Positions 41,466 to 50,690 of a stretch of 64,000 nt of DNA are shown here, in pieces; position 1 is the first letter of the stretch; each line of letters begins with the position of its first letter. The position numbers and the translations under genes were made by a program. The stretch spans positions 3,100,001 through 3,164,000 of the forward strand of contig CATNEN010000005.1 of the NCBI GenBank assembly GCA_950097015.1, in the 5' to 3' direction. This DNA comes from Macrostomum hystrix (lineage: Eukaryota > Animalia > Platyhelminthes). The notes under the pieces were generated by a model. That model was not told the origin of the DNA and made no database searches. It saw only the letters and a program-made list of their open reading frames with translations.

Positions 41466-44360
41466 TTAATCCTCGTCTTTAGGTCGAAATCTCTCCATGC
41501 GTTGCTTTAATTCATCTTGAAAGTTTACTGGTGCACTTTTTGAGACGCCTGGACTAGGAGATTGCGATCTCGACCCGGGACTCCTACCAGCTGGAAGTTT
41601 TAAACCCGCATTCGGTGGAGGCGGCGGGGGCGGAGGAGGAGGTGGTGGAGCTGGAGGAATAACACCCTTTACGATTGGAACTTTGGAAAAAGATTGAGCA
41701 TTTGGCAATGGGCTCACACTGGAACTTTGGACAGTCGGACTAGCTGAGCTAACGAGTTCATCCTGACCTTTAGGTCGAATTCTCTCCATCCGTTGTTTCA
41801 ATTCATCTTGAAAGTTTACTGGTGCACTTTTTGAGACGCCTGGACTAGGAGATTGCGATCTCGACCCGGGACTCCTGCCAGCTGGAAGTTTTAAACCCGC
41901 ATTCGGTGGAGGCGGCGGGGGCGGAGGAGGAGGTGGTGGAGCTGGAGGAAAAACACCCTTTACGATTGGAACTTTGGAAAAAGATTGAGCATTTGGCAAT
42001 GGGCTCACACTGGAACTTTGGACAGTCGGACTCGCTGAGCTAACGGGTTCATCCTGGCCTTTAGGTCGAATTCTCTCCATGCGTTGTTTCAATTCATCTT
42101 GAAAGTTTACTGGTGCACTTTTAGAGACGCCTGGACTAGGAGATTGCGATCTCGACCCGGGACTCCTGCCAGCTGGAAGTTTTAAACCCGCATTCGGTGG
42201 AGGCGGCGGTGGAGGAGGAGGTGGTGGAGCTGGAGGAATAACACCCTTTACGATTGGAACTTTGGAAAAAGATTGAGCATTTGGCAATGGGCTCACACTG
42301 GAACTTTGGACAGTCGGACTCGCTGAGCTAACGGGTTCATCCTGGCCTTTAGGTCGAATTCTCTCCATGCGTTGTTTCAATTCATCTTGAAAGTTTACTG
42401 GTGCACTTTTTGAGACGCCTGGACTAGGAGATTGCGATCTCGACCCGGGACTCCTGCCAGCTGGAAGTTTTAAACCCGCATTCGGCGGAGGCGGCGGTGG
42501 AGGAGGAGGTGGTGGAGCTGGAGGAATAACACCCTTTACGATTGGAACTTTGGAAAAAGATTGAGCATTTGGCAATGGGCTCACACTGGAACTTTGGACA
42601 GTCGGACTAGCTGAGCTAACGCCTTCATCCTCGTCTTTAGGTCGAATTCTCTCCATGCGTTGTTTCAATTCATCTTGAAAGTTTACTGGTGCACTTTTTG
42701 AGACGCCTGGACTAGGAGATTGCGATCTCGACCCGGGACTCCTGCCAGCTGGAAGTTTTAAACCCGCATTCGGTGGAGGAGGAGGAGGGGGTGGAGGAGC
42801 TGGGGGAATCGCACATTTTTTCGCAGTGGCTTCGGCAGCGGACTTCGCACTTAGCGCAGAATTTATGCCGGGTCCTTGGCCTGGCGGATTAGCTAAAGGA
42901 GTACTTGGTATATACTCGACGCTAGATTCATCTTGAAAGTATTCTGCTGAATCATTCAAGCCAATTGGAGAAAAAGATTTCTCCACCGGACTCACTCTAC
43001 TCTGCTTCTGGCTGTCGACATTGATGAGCATAATAGGTGTTCTTGGTTCAGATGAATCCATAACTTTTCTCGGTGTCGAAGTAGCCAGCGGTGGCGAAGG
43101 CAGCCCGACTGGATGAATCGGCGACGGTGGCGCTAGGAAGCCTTCTGCGGCAGCAGTCTCGTACAACCGCTTCATGCCGCCGTAGGCATTTATGACTTTT
43201 GAAATGTTCTTAAAGCCATCTTTCGAATATAATGTCCTTTCAACATTGCAACCGTACTTCTCAAGTATGAATCTCAATGCCGGATCTTTTGCTAAGTAAT
43301 CAGCGTCTATCATGACATAGCCTTGCGTATATTCATTGCCCCTATCCAGGCCATAGCCTAGCTTTCCAACTAACAATCTTAGCGCTGGGTCTTTGGTTAT
43401 GTCAGCTTCGTGTATTGCGCCAGATCTTCCAGGTGCTTCGCTGATGCCCATGTGCATGACGTGTCGAAAATCAGTTGGTCCGCTGATCTCTGGTCGGGCC
43501 TTTCTCTTATCTTGCTTTTCCTTTTTATCTCTCTTTTTTGTTGTTCCGGCGCCATCCGCCCCGCCATCTTTGTCATCCTTGCTGTGACTGGGCTTTTTTC
43601 GACGAAAGAATGCTCGGAATCGCTTACCGGGATGTTTATTCTTTTCTGCGTTGGCATCAACGTCTGCTCGCGTCTGCGGTCTGCTATCCGTTGAGCTGCT
43701 GCTAGCCTTATATGTTTTCGACTGCTGAAAAGAGCATTGCACAGAGTCTTGAACAGATGCTGCCGGCGCAAAATAAGATTCAGGTTCCTCTGGTCTGAGA
43801 ACCAGCAGGTCAATTTTGGATTGGACAACTTCAGCGAATTCGATCGCTTCCGCGTGACCTATCTCGCTGCAAACAAAACTCAAGCCAATGATCTGTTCAT
43901 CGGCTTCAAACTGGTGAAACAGCGGATCTCCTGTATCATACACCATGCCTTGGTAGATCTCTTGCTCAACAATTAGCCGACCCAAGTTAAGGTCGTAAAA
44001 GCGTAAGAAAAAAGTGCGAAAATAGGTATCGCAAATAAAACAAGCAGCGACGGGACTGCAACAGTGCTTGATCCACTTTCCATTGGCAGCGAAATACAAC
44101 TCAACCACCGTTGTGGCTAAACTGTTGCAGCCAGGCTCGAACATGTTAAATAGCACTTCATGCTCATTGTCTGTTAATAGACGACTGTGTCGAATAGTCG
44201 TGTCGGAGTCGGAGTCGGAGTCGGAGTCGGAATCTGAGTCCCGCCTCGCAATCGGCACAATGGAGTTCGACCAGAACTCTATAGGGATCTCTGACTGCTG
44301 TGGTGCCTGTGGACAATGGACAAAATAAGACTTTGAAGTTTTCTTAAACAAGCTCATCAT
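41466..44360 (-). CDS. Divergent intronless WASP-like protein 2 (964 aa) with five ~96-aa repeats, truncated before the CA tail
   Basis: First ~430 aa almost identical to 38047-40353 (offset 4007 bp); five copies of the polyPro..FQDELKQRMERIRP module; GAA>TAA stop at 41466-68. Confidence 0.85.
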   Translation of the reverse strand: MMSLFKKTSKSYFVHCPQAPQQSEIPIEFWSNSIVPIARRDSDSDSDSDSDSDTTIRHSRLLTDNEHEVLFNMFEPGCNSLATTVVELYFAANGKWIKHCCSPVAACFICDTYFRTFFLRFYDLNLGRLIVEQEIYQGMVYDTGDPLFHQFEADEQIIGLSFVCSEIGHAEAIEFAEVVQSKIDLLVLRPEEPESYFAPAASVQDSVQCSFQQSKTYKASSSSTDSRPQTRADVDANAEKNKHPGKRFRAFFRRKKPSHSKDDKDGGADGAGTTKKRDKKEKQDKRKARPEISGPTDFRHVMHMGISEAPGRSGAIHEADITKDPALRLLVGKLGYGLDRGNEYTQGYVMIDADYLAKDPALRFILEKYGCNVERTLYSKDGFKNISKVINAYGGMKRLYETAAAEGFLAPPSPIHPVGLPSPPLATSTPRKVMDSSEPRTPIMLINVDSQKQSRVSPVEKSFSPIGLNDSAEYFQDESSVEYIPSTPLANPPGQGPGINSALSAKSAAEATAKKCAIPPAPPPPPPPPPNAGLKLPAGRSPGSRSQSPSPGVSKSAPVNFQDELKQRMERIRPKDEDEGVSSASPTVQSSSVSPLPNAQSFSKVPIVKGVIPPAPPPPPPPPPPPNAGLKLPAGRSPGSRSQSPSPGVSKSAPVNFQDELKQRMERIRPKGQDEPVSSASPTVQSSSVSPLPNAQSFSKVPIVKGVIPPAPPPPPPPPPPPNAGLKLPAGRSPGSRSQSPSPGVSKSAPVNFQDELKQRMERIRPKGQDEPVSSASPTVQSSSVSPLPNAQSFSKVPIVKGVFPPAPPPPPPPPPPPPNAGLKLPAGRSPGSRSQSPSPGVSKSAPVNFQDELKQRMERIRPKGQDELVSSASPTVQSSSVSPLPNAQSFSKVPIVKGVIPPAPPPPPPPPPPPPNAGLKLPAGRSPGSRSQSPSPGVSKSAPVNFQDELKQRMERFRPKDED

Positions 44361-45435
44361 TCAAAGTTCTTTCTTAATTCTAGCCTATTACAGACAGCTA
44401 TTAAGCAGTTGAGAGATGGAAGAGGCACGTAGAAAGATTAGCACACAGCAAATCAGAATCAAGTAACCAGACAGTGCTTAACAAATTGAAGCAAGTTGGG
44501 CTTAGCAGACAGAATGGGCGAGTCAGAGACAGTGAAAGAAATGCTAAAGCGGAACAATATAAAATAATAAGAGGAAACAAGACATGCTTTTTAATCATAT
44601 AAAAGATATAATAGGCTTGTATAATTTTTGTTTATCCTGAAAATTGATCATGCTTATCGCATTAAAAACTTGCTTGAGCAAAGCGCACTTCTAATAAAAG
44701 TTAATAAAAAGAAGACACTTAAGCAACGAATTGTTTTTTTTAAACGAACAACTCGAAAAAAAACTTCATTACGTAACTCCAAAACAATCCTTTAAGGTCC
44801 TAATAGACAAAGGATAATCTGTCAAGGGATAATAACAAATACTCGTATATATTGCACAATAGTTAAATTATTATGGTCAATCGTTGGGTCCAGGAATTTT
44901 TAGCTGGGCACTTAAAAGTTAAAATCTGAAACATAAAATATGGAGCCCAGCTGATTGGCAGTCAGATGTCACGGCTAATACCTCATAATGACATGCACTC
45001 ATGCTATATGGCTATAAAGGGCTATTTTAGCTCCTCAAAACCGCCATGAACTAACAGTGTAGAAAGATGCAATGATAAACCGATCGACAAGATTACGATG
45101 ACAGGGGTCAGTTGAGGGTGGACTCTGGGGTAGGAAAGTAGATGTACATTTAACCAATGTACATAGCCCTCATCCTCATCCTTATCTAGTTTCATAGGGC
45201 GCCGAACTTGACAAACCGGTGCTAGTTTAAAAAACAATTAGTCAATTTCGAATTTCAAATCAAGCCAAAACTAATAATCATCCATCCAATTACTCAATAC
45301 GGTTGATTAATTAATTTTTTTCAACACAAAACGATGACAGCGACATGGCTAATAAAGACTTTGTTGTCACTTGAATTTTAACTCGCTAACAAGTCTTGCG
45401 CAACCAAAAAAGTGTTAACTCGAATGTTGTAGCAA

Positions 45436-46407
45436 TTAAAACTTGCTGCCCATAACAGCCAGAAAGAATTTCGGCACCTTGATAAAACCCGGCACAAAAC
45501 GTGCCAGAGTAATTAAGCCAGCCTGCTCTAGAAGGTATCGCACGGAGCGCAAGCTCTGCACATGACGATCACCGGCGTCGCGCAGACCGTATTCGTCGCC
45601 AAGATCGCCAGTGAGCAGTACTCGACCAGTTTTGTCATTCAACAGACTTTTGCTAGGAGAGCTAGCCAGGGCGGCGATGGCTTTACCGGCGAATTCCACA
45701 GTTTCGCCCTGTTCAAACATTCGACGCTGCTTAGGCGGCATTCGGGCCAGATTGGTCATGATCTCTTCGGTCTGTACAGCGCCAGGCCAGACGCTGACAG
45801 CGGCAACGCCGCGCGATTTTAATTCGACAGCCATATCGCCAGCCATTCGATCTAGAGCGGCTTTGCCAACACCGTAGGGAACGTTAAATAAGTAGCGCAG
45901 ACCGCCAGGAGACGACAGGTTAACAATCAGGCCACTGCCGCGCTCGATCATCATGCGAGCAGCGTACACGGAGCAGATGTAGTGATTGCGCAAGCCAACA
46001 TTATTCACTTCGTCCCAGGCGGAGACGTCCAATTCCCAGAACTTCTTTCCCATAGATTCTGAGATTAAGCGGACAGCGGAATAGGCGTTGTTAACGAGCA
46101 CATCTAGGCGGCCATTCTGCTCTCGTTGGATCTGCTCAAATAGTCGTTTAACATCGTCGTCCTTCTTGTGATCGCACTGTACTCCGATAGCCCGACCGCC
46201 GCGTGCTTCAATCTCGGCTATGGTCTCTTTGATGCTGCCGCCGACTCCACCGCTACCCGGCGTTGGCTCCATTGTCCGACCAGTGATGTACACGGTGGCT
46301 CCGGCTTCGCCTAGCTGCAGGGCGATGCCCTTGCCGATACCGCGCGTGGCTCCGGTGACCAGGCAGATAAGGCCTGTCAGGGGAAGTTGCTTGGCAGCTA
46401 CCTTAGC
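45436..46407 (-). CDS. DHRS1: DHRS1-like short-chain dehydrogenase (paralog A); no ATG in the exon
   Basis: Open frame from the acceptor at 46407: AKVAAKQLPLTGLICLVTGATRGIGKGIALQLGEAGATVYITGR..LDVLVNNA..FNVPYGVGK..SVWPGAVQTE; start codon unresolved. Confidence 0.9.
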   Translation of the reverse strand, partial: AKVAAKQLPLTGLICLVTGATRGIGKGIALQLGEAGATVYITGRTMEPTPGSGGVGGSIKETIAEIEARGGRAIGVQCDHKKDDDVKRLFEQIQREQNGRLDVLVNNAYSAVRLISESMGKKFWELDVSAWDEVNNVGLRNHYICSVYAARMMIERGSGLIVNLSSPGGLRYLFNVPYGVGKAALDRMAGDMAVELKSRGVAAVSVWPGAVQTEEIMTNLARMPPKQRRMFEQGETVEFAGKAIAALASSPSKSLLNDKTGRVLLTGDLGDEYGLRDAGDRHVQSLRSVRYLLEQAGLITLARFVPGFIKVPKFFLAVMGSKF

Positions 46408-46494
46408 CTGGAATAGGCGATGTGTTCAATATTGTGAAGTAGGATTCTTCGGATTGCTTTGTCAGTTTCAAGGGCATTCGAATATTGGGCAACA

Positions 46495-46832
46495 ACGGGA
46501 TTAACCAGCTTCTAGGGCATTGGAATACTGGGAAACAATGGGATTAACTAGTTTACAGGGCATTGGAATATTGAGAAATAATGAGATCACCAGTTCACAG
46601 GACAGTGGCATATTGGGAAACAATGAGATCACCAGTTTACAGGACATTGGCATGTTGAGAAACAATGACATCACCAGTTTACAGGACAGTGGCATATTGG
46701 GAAATAATGAGATCACCAGTTTACAGGACATTGGCATGTTGAGAAACAATGACATCACCAGTTTACAGGACAGTGGCATATTGGGAAATAATGAGATCAC
46801 CAGTTTACAGGACAGTGGCATGTTGGGAAAAC
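46495..46832. repeat. Minisatellite, 42-bp unit
   Basis: TTGGGAAACAATGAGATCACCAGTTTACAGGACAGTGGCATA-type tandem array. Confidence 0.9.
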
Positions 46833-47220
46833 TAAGCTAACCTCAGTTTCTACGGGATCGGAATTTCGAGAAATAGTTTCAAGTCCTAATTCGATTTGGT
46901 AGACCACACTTATATAGGATTATAAAGCAGAAAGCAAAAAAGTAACAAAAACAACAAGAAACTACACTTTGACTTGTAAACAACTCGTCTTTAGTAGAAA
47001 TCAAAACAGAAATAGTTTCAGTTCTCAGCGTCAAGTTATTATGGTAGGAAAAAGGTAAATTATGTCAAATGATTAACTGCAAACAAGAACATAGGCACAC
47101 AGTTTAAAGTCAATAGAACTCAAAACAATCAGTTTATTACCGGACTATTAAATGGCAAAAATTATCATAAGATTCATCTTTATCTTCATGAAAATATGCA
47201 TTAAATAAATTCTAGTATTA

Positions 47221-48854
47221 TTAAAACTTGCTAGTAGCAGCAGCAATCACCCAGAATGGCACCCGAATGCAGGCCGGCACTAACTTAGCCAATCCACTAT
47301 AGCCGTAGAATTCCAATAGGAAGCTAGCAGATCGCATGCTAACAATGGACCGGCCGCCAACATCAGTGAAGCCGTATTCGTTGGCTAATTCCGCTGTGAG
47401 CAGGATTCGACCAGTCTTATTGGCTAGCAATTGATTGATGGGCTCTGAGGCTAGAGCCGACACAGCCTTGCCAACAAATTCGGTTGTTTCTCCGCGACGA
47501 AACATTTCTAGCATGCGACGATCGACCGGGCTGATCACCTGGCCAGAATCCGCGTCCGCGGCGGCCACCACGGCTAGAGCCTCTTCCGTCTGGACGGCGC
47601 CTGGCCAGAGACTAATAACGGCAACACCGCGCGACCTTAGCTCTACCTGTATGAGCGATCAGGGGATTGGCATGGGATTGGCAGTGTAGGATCAGGGGAT
47701 TGACATGGGATTGGCAGTGTAGGATCAGGGGATTGGCATGGGATTGGCAGTGTAGGATCAGGGGGTTGACATGGGATTAACAGTGTAGGATCAGGGGATT
47801 GGCATGGGATTGGCAGTGTAGGATCAGGGGATTGGCATGGGATTTGCAGTGTAGGATCAGGGGATTGACATGGGATTGGCAGTGTAGGATCAGGGGGTTG
47901 ACATGGGATTAACAGTGTAGGATCAGGGGATTGGCATGGGATTGGCAGTGTAGGATCAGGGATTGACATGGGATTTGCAGTGTAGGATCTGGGGATTGAC
48001 ATGAGATTTGCAGTGTAGGATCAGGGGGTTGGCAGTGAAGGATCAGAGGATTGGTTGTAGGATCAGGGGATTGGCTGTGTAGGATCAGGGGATTGACAGT
48101 GTAGGATCAGAGGATTTGGTGTAGGATCAGGGGATTGGCAGTGTAGGATCAGGGGATTAAGGTGTAGGATTAGGGGATTGGGGTGTAGGATTAGGGGATT
48201 GTCAGTTGTAGGATCAGGGGATTGTAAGTGATTAGGAATCTTGTTCATCATGTTCCAGTATTAAGTAATGCTCACCGCCATATCAGCAGCCATACGATCG
48301 AAAGCAGCTTTGCCGACGCCGTACGGCACGTTGAACAGGTAGCTGAGACCACCGCCCGAAGACACGTTGATAATAAGGCCGCTGCCACGCGGCACCATCA
48401 TGCGAGCAGCGTACACCGAGCAGATGTAGTGATTGCGCAATCCGACACTGTTCACTTCGTCCCAAACATCTGGCGACATCTCCCAGAACATTTTACCACG
48501 ATTCTCAGCAATAACCCGAGCAGCAGAGAATGCGTTGTTAACGAGCACATCTAGGCGGCCATTCTGCTCTCGTTGGATCTGCTCAAATAGTCGTTTAACA
48601 TCGTCGTCCTTCTTGTGATCGCACTGTACTCCGATAGCCCGACCGCCGCGTGCTTCAATCTCGGCTATGGTCTCTTTGATGCTGCCGCCGACTGAAATTG
48701 AGTCGCCAGACGCCGACGCACCTTTACCTGCTGGTTCAAGAGTTCTGCCGGTGATGTATACCGTTGCACCGGCTTCACCTAGTTTGATGGCGATGCCCTT
48801 GCCGATGCCACGTGTAGCTCCAGTGACTAGGCAGACTTTTCCAGATAGAGACAT
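47221..48854 (-). CDS. DHRS1: DHRS1-like short-chain dehydrogenase (paralog B), complement(join(47221..47646,48276..48854)), ~334 aa
   Basis: MSLSGKVCLVTGATRGIGKG..NNA..YGVGK..DMA|VELRSRG..LWPG; donor gcg|gtgagc, acceptor catacag|, phase 0. Confidence 0.92.
47657..48225. repeat. Minisatellite, 33-bp unit, filling the DHRS1-B intron
   Basis: CAGGGGATTGGCATGGGATTGGCAGTGTAGGAT tandem array. Confidence 0.93.
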
Positions 48855-48929
48855 TGCAGTCCAACTGATTGGCTGCAAATTAGATAAGAATTGAAGGTCA
48901 TTCAGGGGCGAGAACGATTCTCACAATGG

Positions 48930-50690
48930 CTTGAAAGGCGATTTTCCTAGGGAGTTGGAGGACGATTCTCATAGCGAGTTGGAGGACGATTCTCATAGGG
49001 AGTTGGAGGACGATTCTCATAGGGAGTTGGAGGACGATTCTCATAGGGAGTTGGGGGACGAATCTCATAAGGAGTTGGAGGACGAATCTCATAGGGAGTT
49101 GGAGGACGATTCTCATAGGGAGTTGGAGGACGATTCTCATAGCGAGTTGGAGGACGAATCTCATAGCGAGTTGGAAGACGATTCTCATAGGGAGTTGGAG
49201 GACGATTCTCATAGGGAGTTGGAGGACGAATCTCATAGGGAGTTGAAGGACGATTCTCTTAGGGAGTTGGAGGACGATTATCTTAGGGAGTTCGAGGACG
49301 AATCTCATAGGGAGTTGGAGGACGAATCTCATAGGGAGTTGGAAGACGAATCTCATAGGGAGTTGGAGGACGAATCTCATAGGGAGTTGGAGGACGATTA
49401 TCTTAGGGAGTTGAAGGACGATTCTCACAGTGGCTAGAAAGACGATTCTCTTACGGAGTTGAAGGACGATTATCATAGGGAGTTCGAGGACGAATCTCAT
49501 AGGGAGTTGGAGGACGATTCTCTTAGGGAGTTGGAGGACGATTATCTTAGGGAGTTGGAGGACGATTCTCACAGTGGCTAGAAAGACGATTCTCTTACGG
49601 AGTTGAAGGACGATTATCATAGGGAGTTCGAGGACGAATCTCATAGGGAGTTGGAGGACGAATCTCATAGGGAGCTGGAAGACGAATCTCATAGGGAGTT
49701 GGAGGACGATTCTCATAGGGAGTTGGAGGACGAATCTCATAGGGAGTTGGAGGACGAATCTCATAGGGAGTTGGAGGACGAATCTCATAGGGAGTTGGAA
49801 GACGAATCTCATAGGGAGTTGGAGGACGAATCTCATAGGGAGTTGGAGGAGGATTCTCATAGCGAGTTGGAGGACAATTCTCATAGCGAGTTGGAGGACG
49901 AATCTCATAGGGAGTTGAAGGACGATTCTCATAGCGAGTTGGAGGACGATTCTCATAGCGAGTTGGAGGACGATTCTCATAGGGAGTTGGAGGAGGATTC
50001 TCATAGCGAGTTGGAGCACAATTCTCATAGCGAGTTGGAGGACGATTCTCATAGCGAGTTGAAGGACGATTCTCATAGCGAGTTGGAGGACGATTCTCAT
50101 AGCGAGTTGGAGGACGATTCTCATAGGGAGTTAAAGGACGATTCTCATAGCGAGTTGGAGGACGATTCTCATAGCGAGTTGGAGGACGATTCTCATAGGG
50201 AGTTGAAGGACGATTCTCTTAGGGAGTTGGAGGACGATTATCTTAGGGAGTTCGAGGACGAATCTCATAGGGAGTTGGAGGACGAATCTCATAGGGAGTT
50301 GGAGGACGATTATCTTAGGGAGTTGAAGGACGATTCTCACAGTGGCTAGAAAGACGATTCTCTTACGGAGTTGAAGGACGATTATCATAGGGAGTTCGAG
50401 GACGAATCTCATAGGGAGTTGGAGGACGAATCTCATAGGGAGTTGGAGGACGATTCTCATAGGGAGTTGGAGGACGAATCTCATAGGGAGTTGGAAGACG
50501 AATCTCATAGGGAGTTGGAGGACGAATCTCATAGGGAGTTCGAGGACGAATCTCATAGGGAGTTGGAGGACGAATCTCATAGGGAGTTGGAGGACGAATC
50601 TCATAGCGAGTTGGAGGACGAATCTCATAGCGAGTTGGAGGACGAATCTCATAGGGAGTTGGAGGACGAATCTAATTGGTAGTTGGAGGA
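48930..50690. repeat. Minisatellite, 24-bp unit GATTCTCATAGGGAGTTGGAGGAC
   Basis: ~70 copies with block-wise re-duplicated variants. Confidence 0.96.

What the first reader, a model, noticed from the sequence alone, without database searches (positions are those of the whole stretch)
45436..46410. DHRS1-A has no start codon of its own; a spliced-leader AUG would complete it exactly
The reading frame opens at an acceptor (..CCTATTCCAG|GCT AAG GTA), with an in-frame TGA 21 nt upstream. The first in-frame ATG lies after the TGATRGIG Rossmann motif, so using it would destroy cofactor binding. Flatworm spliced leaders end in AUG, which is known to be able to act as initiator. SL-AUG joined here gives M-AKVAAKQLPLTG.., the normal DHRS1 length. 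The otherwise intact ORF argues against a pseudogene.
Basis: partly seen in the sequence, partly recalled or inferred. Interest (0 to 1): 0.72.

Follow-up and report, generated by a model that had tools for sequence, protein, structure and literature searches.

The report
Spliced leader supplies DHRS1 start codon

Summary

**The gene.** On the minus strand, a single intact exon (46407..45436) encodes a DHRS1-type short-chain dehydrogenase.
- The exon opens directly after the acceptor ..CCTATTCCAG|.
- An in-frame TGA lies 21 nt upstream.
- The exon has no ATG in any frame before codon 46, which lies beyond the TGATRGIG cofactor motif.

**RNA evidence.** Contigs from three public runs in two studies stop matching the genome at 46408. 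They continue with letters that, read on the RNA strand, are ACTGCGAAGACTCAATTTATTGCAT. Together with G46408 this is an exact 26-nt suffix of the published Macrostomum lignano spliced leader, which ends in ATG. The mRNA therefore reads ...UUGCAUG|GCUAAGGUA, giving M-AKVAAKQLPLTG.. and a protein of 324 aa. No contig covers the DNA upstream of the acceptor.

**Not a pseudogene.** Compared with a related species' transcript, the gene shows dN/dS of 0.06.

**What is not shown.** Translation from the leader AUG is inferred, not demonstrated.

**Novelty.** The mechanism is already known (Cheng et al. 2006). The Macrostomum genome paper also notes the leader's final ATG as a start codon. This scan had already found and confirmed the same thing for several other genes of this genome (TAF10, XPA, ARL5, TOP3A and others). 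Interest is low.

The parts
45436..46407 (-). Single coding exon of DHRS1-A: 323 sense codons (AKVAAKQLPLTG...MGSKF) plus stop TAA at 45438-45436; it has no ATG of its own before codon 46
   Evidence: Pfam adh_short 5e-36; DHRS1 homologues at 55-61% identity; human DHRS1 2qq5 at 1.5e-78; RNA contigs cover all of it
46408..46419 (-). Trans-splice acceptor CGCCTATTCCAG; AG at 46409-46408. G46408 coincides with the last G of the leader's AUG, so alignments run to 46408
   Evidence: Sequence. Contigs of X5, X6 and X1 leave the genome here and continue with spliced-leader letters (tables 7 and 8)
46426..46428 (-). In-frame TGA 21 nt upstream of the first exon base. It closes the frame in genomic DNA and lies in the outron, which is removed
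46333..46356 (-). TGATRGIG dinucleotide-binding (Rossmann) motif, residues 18-25 of the exon translation
   Evidence: regex on the translation
46270..46272 (-). First ATG inside the exon (codon 46, context ACAATGG). Starting here would give a 278-aa product without the cofactor motif
46085..46246 (-). 162-nt tract exactly identical to paralogue B (48532-48693): a recent gene-conversion tract. It is where the contigs of X5 and X6 break
45250..45435 (-). 3' UTR. It is covered by the same contigs, which run on 50-270 letters beyond 45250
   Evidence: table 8
46482..46830 (.). 42-nt x 8.3 tandem repeat in the spacer between B's stop and A's acceptor (part of the outron or intercistronic region)
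48276..48872 (-). Paralogue DHRS1-B, exon 1. Acceptor ttgcag| with AG at 48874-48873; own ATG at 48854-48852; donor GT at 48275-48274
47221..47646 (-). Paralogue DHRS1-B, exon 2, ending in stop TAA at 47223-47221. An AATAAA lies at 47138

Best explanation
DHRS1-A is a functional, expressed, intronless short-chain dehydrogenase gene whose initiator codon is not in the gene. Its pre-mRNA is SL trans-spliced at the acceptor at 46409-46408. The roughly 35-nt Macrostomum spliced leader ends in AUG and is joined directly to G46407. The mature mRNA therefore reads ...UUAUUGCAUG|GCUAAGGUA.

The leader AUG is the first AUG of the mRNA and is in frame, with no codon between it and the exon. A scanning ribosome starting there makes M-AKVAAKQLPLTGLICLVTGATRGIG..., 324 aa with a complete Rossmann motif.

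Shown: the gene structure, the leader-exon junction in RNA-derived contigs, the frame, and purifying selection. Inferred: that ribosomes actually start at the leader AUG. This rests on the scanning rule, the conserved N-terminus and published work on the flatworm leader AUG.
For: 1. **Junction in RNA.** In one search, tables 7 and 8, contigs of X5, X6 and X1 (two studies) align to 46408. They then carry 21-25 loose letters, + strand ATGCAATAAATTGAGTCTTCGCAGT. Their reverse complement plus G46408 is a 26-nt exact suffix of the published M. lignano leader CGGTCTCTTACTGCGAAGACTCAATTTATTGCATG (PMC8629364; computed).
2. **Nothing upstream.** Depth is zero at 46426-46480 in all four runs (table 2). 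This also shows that these assemblies are RNA-derived.
3. **Frame and first AUG.** The leader ATG is in frame and gives a 324-aa ORF. The next ATG in any frame is codon 46, after TGATRGIG.
4. **Conserved N-terminus.** The segment ..KQLPLTGLICLVTG resembles the ..(K)xPLAGKVxLVTG N-termini of DHRS1 homologues, and B conserves it from LVTG onward. These codons therefore appear to be translated.
5. **Selection.** dN/dS is 0.06 (dS 0.45) over 205 codons against the orthologous transcript of a related species, L001. The SDR motifs TGxxxGxG, NNA and YxxxK are intact.
6. **Literature.** All reported flatworm leaders end in AUG. In Schistosoma mansoni the leader AUG is in frame in 28% of trans-spliced mRNAs, and more than 40 cDNAs need it (Cheng et al. 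2006, as summarised in PMC9851317, and PMC12582326). The M. hystrix/M. cliftonense genome paper notes the leader's final ATG as a translation start codon (PMC10468722).
Against: - No ribosome-profiling, proteomic or N-terminal evidence was available, so the translation start is inferred.
- The evidence comes from assembled contigs, not raw reads. Contigs drop rare variants, so a minor cis-spliced or un-spliced isoform cannot be excluded, and the share of leader-carrying molecules is unknown.
- The runs are not recorded as RNA in the metadata (listed as '?' or 'RNA? a guess'). Their RNA origin is deduced from the leader junction and the lack of upstream coverage.
- The leader AUG has U at -3 (UUGCAUGG), which is a weak vertebrate-type context. 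Codon 46 has a strong one (ACAAUGG), so some leaky scanning is conceivable.
- Whether the ATG-less state holds in more distant Macrostomum species could not be tested, because L001 lacks the 5' end.
Confidence: 0.88

Rival explanations
1. The leader is added, but ribosomes skip its AUG because of the weak context and the short distance from the cap. They start at the internal AUG of codon 46 and make a 278-aa protein without the TGxxxGxG motif, either exclusively or as a sizeable second isoform through leaky scanning.
For: The leader AUG has U at -3 and lies only 32 nt from the cap. Codon 46 has the context ACAATGG.
Against: - The 45 codons before it encode the most conserved part of the family (beta1 plus TGATRGIGKGIA..GA.VYITGR). 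They are kept between A and B and across DHRS1 homologues.
- A product lacking them could not bind the cofactor.
- Use of the leader AUG as initiator is reported for flatworms (Cheng et al. 2006).
Confidence: 0.07
2. A cis-spliced upstream exon, lying further upstream in the B-A spacer or beyond, supplies the real ATG. The leader-carrying form would then be a minor or alternative transcript.
For: Contigs drop rare variants, so a minor isoform cannot be excluded. ATGs do exist in the 813-nt spacer.
Against: - In three runs from two studies, the only sequence joined at 46408 is the spliced leader.
- No contig lies on 46409-46480.
- Most ATGs in the spacer lie in a 42-nt minisatellite.
Confidence: 0.03
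3. DHRS1-A is a decaying duplicate (pseudogene) of B that lost its start codon and is merely transcribed.
For: It is a tandem duplicate, it is intronless, and it lacks a genomic ATG.
Against: - The 323-codon ORF is uninterrupted and all SDR motifs are intact.
- dN/dS is 0.06 at dS 0.45 against a related species.
- Its contig depth is higher than B's in X5 and X6 (a weak measure).
- The leader supplies an in-frame AUG.
Confidence: 0.02

Closest known systems
[quoted passage not shown]
   Same: The leader ends in AUG. It is joined in frame directly in front of an ORF that has no usable AUG of its own, so a conserved N-terminus can be made only from the leader AUG.
   Different: The species is a free-living macrostomorph and the gene is DHRS1. 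Translation was not tested here, whereas the 2006 work included translation experiments (known to me only through the summaries in PMC9851317 and PMC12582326).
Macrostomum SL trans-splicing (Ustyantsev & Berezikov 2021, PMC8629364; Wiberg et al. 2023, PMC10468722)
   Same: The 26 leader letters seen on DHRS1-A transcripts are an exact suffix of the published 35-nt M. lignano leader. The 2023 genome paper already remarks that the leader's final ATG is a likely start codon.
   Different: In the passages I read, those papers give genome-wide rates (10-30% of genes trans-spliced). They do not list genes that depend on the leader AUG, and DHRS1 is not named there.
Other leader-AUG-dependent genes reported earlier by this scan in the same genome (TAF10, XPA, ARL5, TMEM160, TOP3A, an M3A peptidase)
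   Same: The anatomy is the same (phase-0 acceptor, no own ATG, leader seen in RNA assemblies) and so is the conclusion.
   Different: Here a tandem paralogue (B) with its own ATG sits next to the ATG-less copy, giving a within-locus comparison.
Human DHRS1 (PDB 2qq5), classical SDR
   Same: E = 1.5e-78 over residues 9-271. TGxxxGxG, NNA and YxxxK motifs are present, and the overall length is similar.
   Different: The human gene has an ordinary genomic start codon (my own knowledge). The flatworm N-terminus is about 6 residues longer than the family median.

Membership tests
Leader-AUG-initiated flatworm mRNA (Cheng et al. 2006 type) | The organism's spliced leader ends in AUG | tested here: met
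   The contig tails plus G46408 read ...TTATTGCATG, an exact suffix of the published Macrostomum leader
Leader-AUG-initiated flatworm mRNA (Cheng et al. 2006 type) | The leader is joined at a 3' splice acceptor so that its AUG is in frame with the ORF, with no stop between | tested here: met
   The junction is at 46408/46407 in X5, X6 and X1. ATG|GCT AAG GTA gives a 324-aa ORF
Leader-AUG-initiated flatworm mRNA (Cheng et al. 2006 type) | No AUG in the recipient exon upstream of conserved, essential N-terminal residues | tested here: met
   The first ATG in any frame is codon 46, after TGATRGIG
Leader-AUG-initiated flatworm mRNA (Cheng et al. 2006 type) | Translation really begins at the leader AUG | not testable with these tools
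   No ribosome-profiling or proteomic data were available. This is inferred from scanning, conservation and the literature
DHRS1 / classical short-chain dehydrogenase-reductase | adh_short domain above the curated cut-off, with TGxxxGxG, NNAG-type and YxxxK motifs | tested here: met
   PF00106 at 124.5 bits against a cut-off of 26.6. TGATRGIG is at residue 18, NNA at 106 and YGVGK at 178
DHRS1 / classical short-chain dehydrogenase-reductase | Closest named relatives are DHRS1 rather than another SDR subfamily | tested here: met
   Named hits at 53-61% identity over 97-98% of the query are all DHRS1 or DHRS1-like. The best PDB chain is human DHRS1 2qq5 at 1.5e-78; the next is at 2e-35
Downstream gene of a leader-resolved operon (criterion of PMC8629364) | Same-strand upstream gene at a repeat-adjusted distance under 1 kb, with the downstream gene SL trans-spliced | tested here: met
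   B's stop at 47221 to A's acceptor at 46408 is 812 nt, of which 349 nt are tandem repeat. A is trans-spliced
Downstream gene of a leader-resolved operon (criterion of PMC8629364) | A polycistronic B-A precursor transcribed from one promoter | not tested
   The reads tool was used once, on 45250-46480 only. Contigs cannot show a precursor, and none covers 46426-46480
Pseudogene / decayed duplicate | Frame disruptions, relaxed selection or no expression | tested here: not met
   The ORF is intact, dN/dS is 0.06, and it is present in RNA-derived contigs of four runs

The most novel reading that the evidence does not exclude
The B-A pair may be a natural before-and-after example of how a gene becomes dependent on the leader AUG.

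Both paralogues have their 5' acceptor at nearly the same codon distance from the Rossmann motif: 17 codons in B and 18 in A, counted from a leader Met. Both acceptors are in frame. B still keeps an internal backup ATG 7 codons downstream, while A has CTT at the aligned position. A would then be translatable only when trans-spliced, possibly as the downstream cistron of a B-A operon. That would tie its expression wholly to leader addition.
Probability: 0.3. Interest if true: 0.3.

Novelty: new member of a known kind. Interest (0 to 1): 0.15.

Why it matters
The main value is for annotation. ATG-based gene callers will truncate DHRS1-A to a 278-aa or shorter product, or call it a pseudogene. 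Macrostomum annotation needs to allow leader-donated start codons; the genome paper kept the leader's ATG on its reads for this reason.

Biologically it adds one well-documented metabolic-enzyme example to a mechanism known since 2006. The neighbouring paralogue that retains its own ATG gives a small evolutionary comparison. It opens no new question.

Tried and rejected
1. **Leader gene or relic in the window.** I searched the last 21 nt of the leader with up to 3 mismatches and found 0 matches. The leader letters on the transcripts therefore cannot come from nearby DNA. A is also not an obvious retrocopy of a trans-spliced mRNA carrying a leader scar.
2. **Other species' DHRS1 transcripts.** I checked whether the closest full-length hits (P0010/L002, P0008/L003) take their Met from a leader. 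Both have ordinary 5' UTRs and their own ATGs. Their organisms are unknown, so this says nothing about flatworm conservation.
3. **5' end of the orthologue in a related species.** L001 (P0004, 95% aa identity) covers only the 3' two-thirds of the gene.
4. **Second word search with B's exon 1.** I considered it, to look for products beginning MPISWTAM. I dropped it because the first search returned no protein from the runs that hold this species' transcripts, so a blank would mean nothing.
5. **Paralogue B and the spacer in the reads call.** I left them out because the stretch contains long tandem repeats that the tool says it turns away, and only one call was allowed.
6. **Joined sequences.** Joined forms were built only inside local scripts, for the ATG and frame scan and for the A/B alignment.

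Full report
**What is in the sequence.** The finding lies on the minus strand.
- The exon begins after ...atcgcctattccag|, with the AG at 46409-46408 and the first exon base at 46407.
- The in-frame codons upstream are CAG TTC CTA CGC CAT ACA TGA. The TGA at 46428-46426 is therefore 21 nt before the exon, as stated.
- The exon has no ATG in any frame until codon 46 (46272-46270). That is after TGATRGIG at residues 18-25 (46356-46333).

**What the gene is.**
- The translation matches Pfam adh_short at 5e-36, 124.5 bits against a cut-off of 26.6.
- It is 53-61% identical over about 97% of its length to many proteins named DHRS1 in molluscs, echinoderms, amphioxus, fish and nematodes.
- Its best solved relative is human DHRS1, 2qq5, at E = 1.5e-78; the next chain scores 2e-35.
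- The SDR motifs TGxxxGxG, NNA and YGVGK are present.
- Earlier notes of this scan place the genome in Macrostomum, and one names M. hystrix. I did not test the species name itself. The leader sequence found below is the Macrostomum one.

**The decisive test.** I found eight public runs that hold the stretch. I laid the contigs of four of them on 45250-46480.
- In X5 and X6 (study P2) and X1 (study P1), a contig aligns up to 46408. It then carries 21, 24 and 25 loose letters respectively: + strand ATGCAATAAATTGAGTCTTCGCAGT.
- On the RNA strand this reads ACTGCGAAGACTCAATTTATTGCAT. Followed by G46408 it is an exact 26-nt suffix of the published 35-nt M. lignano spliced leader CGGTCTCTTACTGCGAAGACTCAATTTATTGCATG (PMC8629364; computed).
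- The one-base overlap arises because the last G of the leader's AUG and the G of the acceptor AG are the same letter. With a canonical AG acceptor, the junction is leader...AUG|G46407.
- X1's contig spans the whole mRNA in one piece, from the leader through 46408 to beyond 45250.
- No run has any depth on 46426-46480.

These assemblies are therefore RNA-derived. Their metadata do not say so. The only thing seen joined to the exon is the leader. The leader sequence is absent from the 64-kb window even with 3 mismatches, so it comes in trans.

**Consequence for the reading frame.** In the mature mRNA the leader ATG directly precedes GCT, in frame, and opens a 324-aa ORF. It is the first AUG of the message, and the next AUG in any frame is codon 46. 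By ordinary scanning the leader AUG is the start. It is the only way to make a protein with the cofactor-binding motif.
- With that Met, the distance to the TG motif is 18 residues. The median is 12, and the usual range 8-18, in 109 homologues of normal length. The protein is at the long end of normal.
- Its ..KQLPLTG.. resembles the ..KxPLAGK.. that precedes beta1 in many homologues.

Translation itself was not observed. This step is inferred.

**Functional gene or relic?**
- The ORF is intact.
- Against the orthologous transcript of a related species (L001, from P0004), 205 aligned codons differ by 50.5 synonymous and 12.5 non-synonymous changes. That gives dS 0.45, dN 0.027 and dN/dS 0.06.
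- X1's copy differs at four sites. Working from the positions by hand, two are synonymous and two replace an amino acid.

This is a gene under strong purifying selection.

**Surroundings.** A second DHRS1 gene (B) lies 0.8 kb upstream on the same strand.
- Exon 1 runs from an acceptor ttgcag| (AG at 48874-48873) to 48276, with its own ATG at 48854-48852.
- Its intron (48275-47647) is filled by 33- and 22-nt minisatellites.
- Exon 2 is 47646-47221.
- A and B are 71% identical in protein and mostly 50-80% identical in DNA. They nevertheless share one tract of 162 identical bases (A 46246-46085, B 48693-48532), a recent gene conversion. That tract is where the contigs of X5 and X6 break.
- A has no intron.
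- B's 5' acceptor is also in frame with its ATG, with no stop between.
- The B-A spacer is 812 nt, of which 349 nt are a 42-nt tandem repeat. This meets the repeat-adjusted under-1-kb criterion that Ustyantsev and Berezikov used to call operons in M. lignano. No precursor RNA was examined.

**Comparison with what is known.** The mechanism is established.
- All reported flatworm leaders end in AUG.
- In Schistosoma mansoni the leader AUG is in frame in 28% of trans-spliced transcripts, and more than 40 cDNAs need it for a correct start (Cheng et al. 2006, as summarised in PMC9851317, and PMC12582326).
- For Macrostomum, 10-30% of genes are trans-spliced. The M. hystrix/M. cliftonense genome paper states that the leader probably includes the final ATG as a translation start codon (PMC10468722).
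- This scan has already reported, and in several cases confirmed with RNA, the same anatomy for other genes of this genome: TAF10, XPA, ARL5, TMEM160, TOP3A, an M3A peptidase and others. I did not re-test those. They neither raise nor lower the evidence here, but they show that the case is one of many.

**Verdict.** DHRS1-A is a new, well-documented member of a known kind. The remaining uncertainty is whether ribosomes use the leader AUG exclusively. Its context (U at -3) is weaker than that of codon 46, so some leaky scanning cannot be excluded. Minor non-leader isoforms could also exist. Interest is low.

Noticed in passing
window 48852-48874 (minus strand): Paralogue DHRS1-B has a 5' acceptor (ttgcag|CCA ATC AGT TGG ACT GCA ATG) that is in frame with its own ATG, with no stop between. 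If the leader is joined there, its AUG would add M-PISWTA in front of MSLSGK. That would give almost the same N-terminal length as A (17 vs 18 residues before TGxxxGxG).
   Followed up: partly
window 46085-46246 and 48532-48693: There are 162 bases of exact identity between tandem paralogues that are otherwise 50-80% identical in DNA. This is a recent gene-conversion tract, and it splits the transcript contigs of runs X5 and X6.
   Followed up: yes
window 47647-48275: B's only intron (phase 0, between ..DMA and VEL..) consists almost entirely of 33-nt and 22-nt minisatellites, while A has no intron at all. Either A lost the intron or B gained it after duplication.
   Followed up: partly
window 46408-47220: The B-to-A spacer is 812 nt, of which 349 nt are a 42-nt x 8.3 tandem repeat (46482-46830). 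B's AATAAA is at 47138. By the published M. lignano criterion (under 1 kb after subtracting repeats, downstream gene trans-spliced), B and A would count as a two-gene operon of paralogues.
   Followed up: partly
window 48939-50200: A long 24-nt minisatellite (more than 52 copies, 90% matches) lies directly upstream of B's 5' acceptor. Together with the arrays in B's intron and in the B-A spacer, this locus is unusually rich in minisatellites.
   Followed up: no
L001:1-60: The contig of a related species' DHRS1-A transcript (Logan SRR24204641) carries a cluster of mostly C-to-T differences, creating four in-frame stops, in its first 60 bases. These lie inside the region that is the A/B conversion tract in the window. 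It is probably a contig-end artefact or a damaged or edited read.
   Followed up: no
window 44360-45435: RNA contigs of X5 and X6 run 224-270 letters beyond 45250. A's 3' UTR would then reach about 44980-45026 without a canonical AATAAA/ATTAAA in 44700-45435. The next same-strand gene (WASP-like, ATG at 44360) follows about 0.6 kb later.
   Followed up: no
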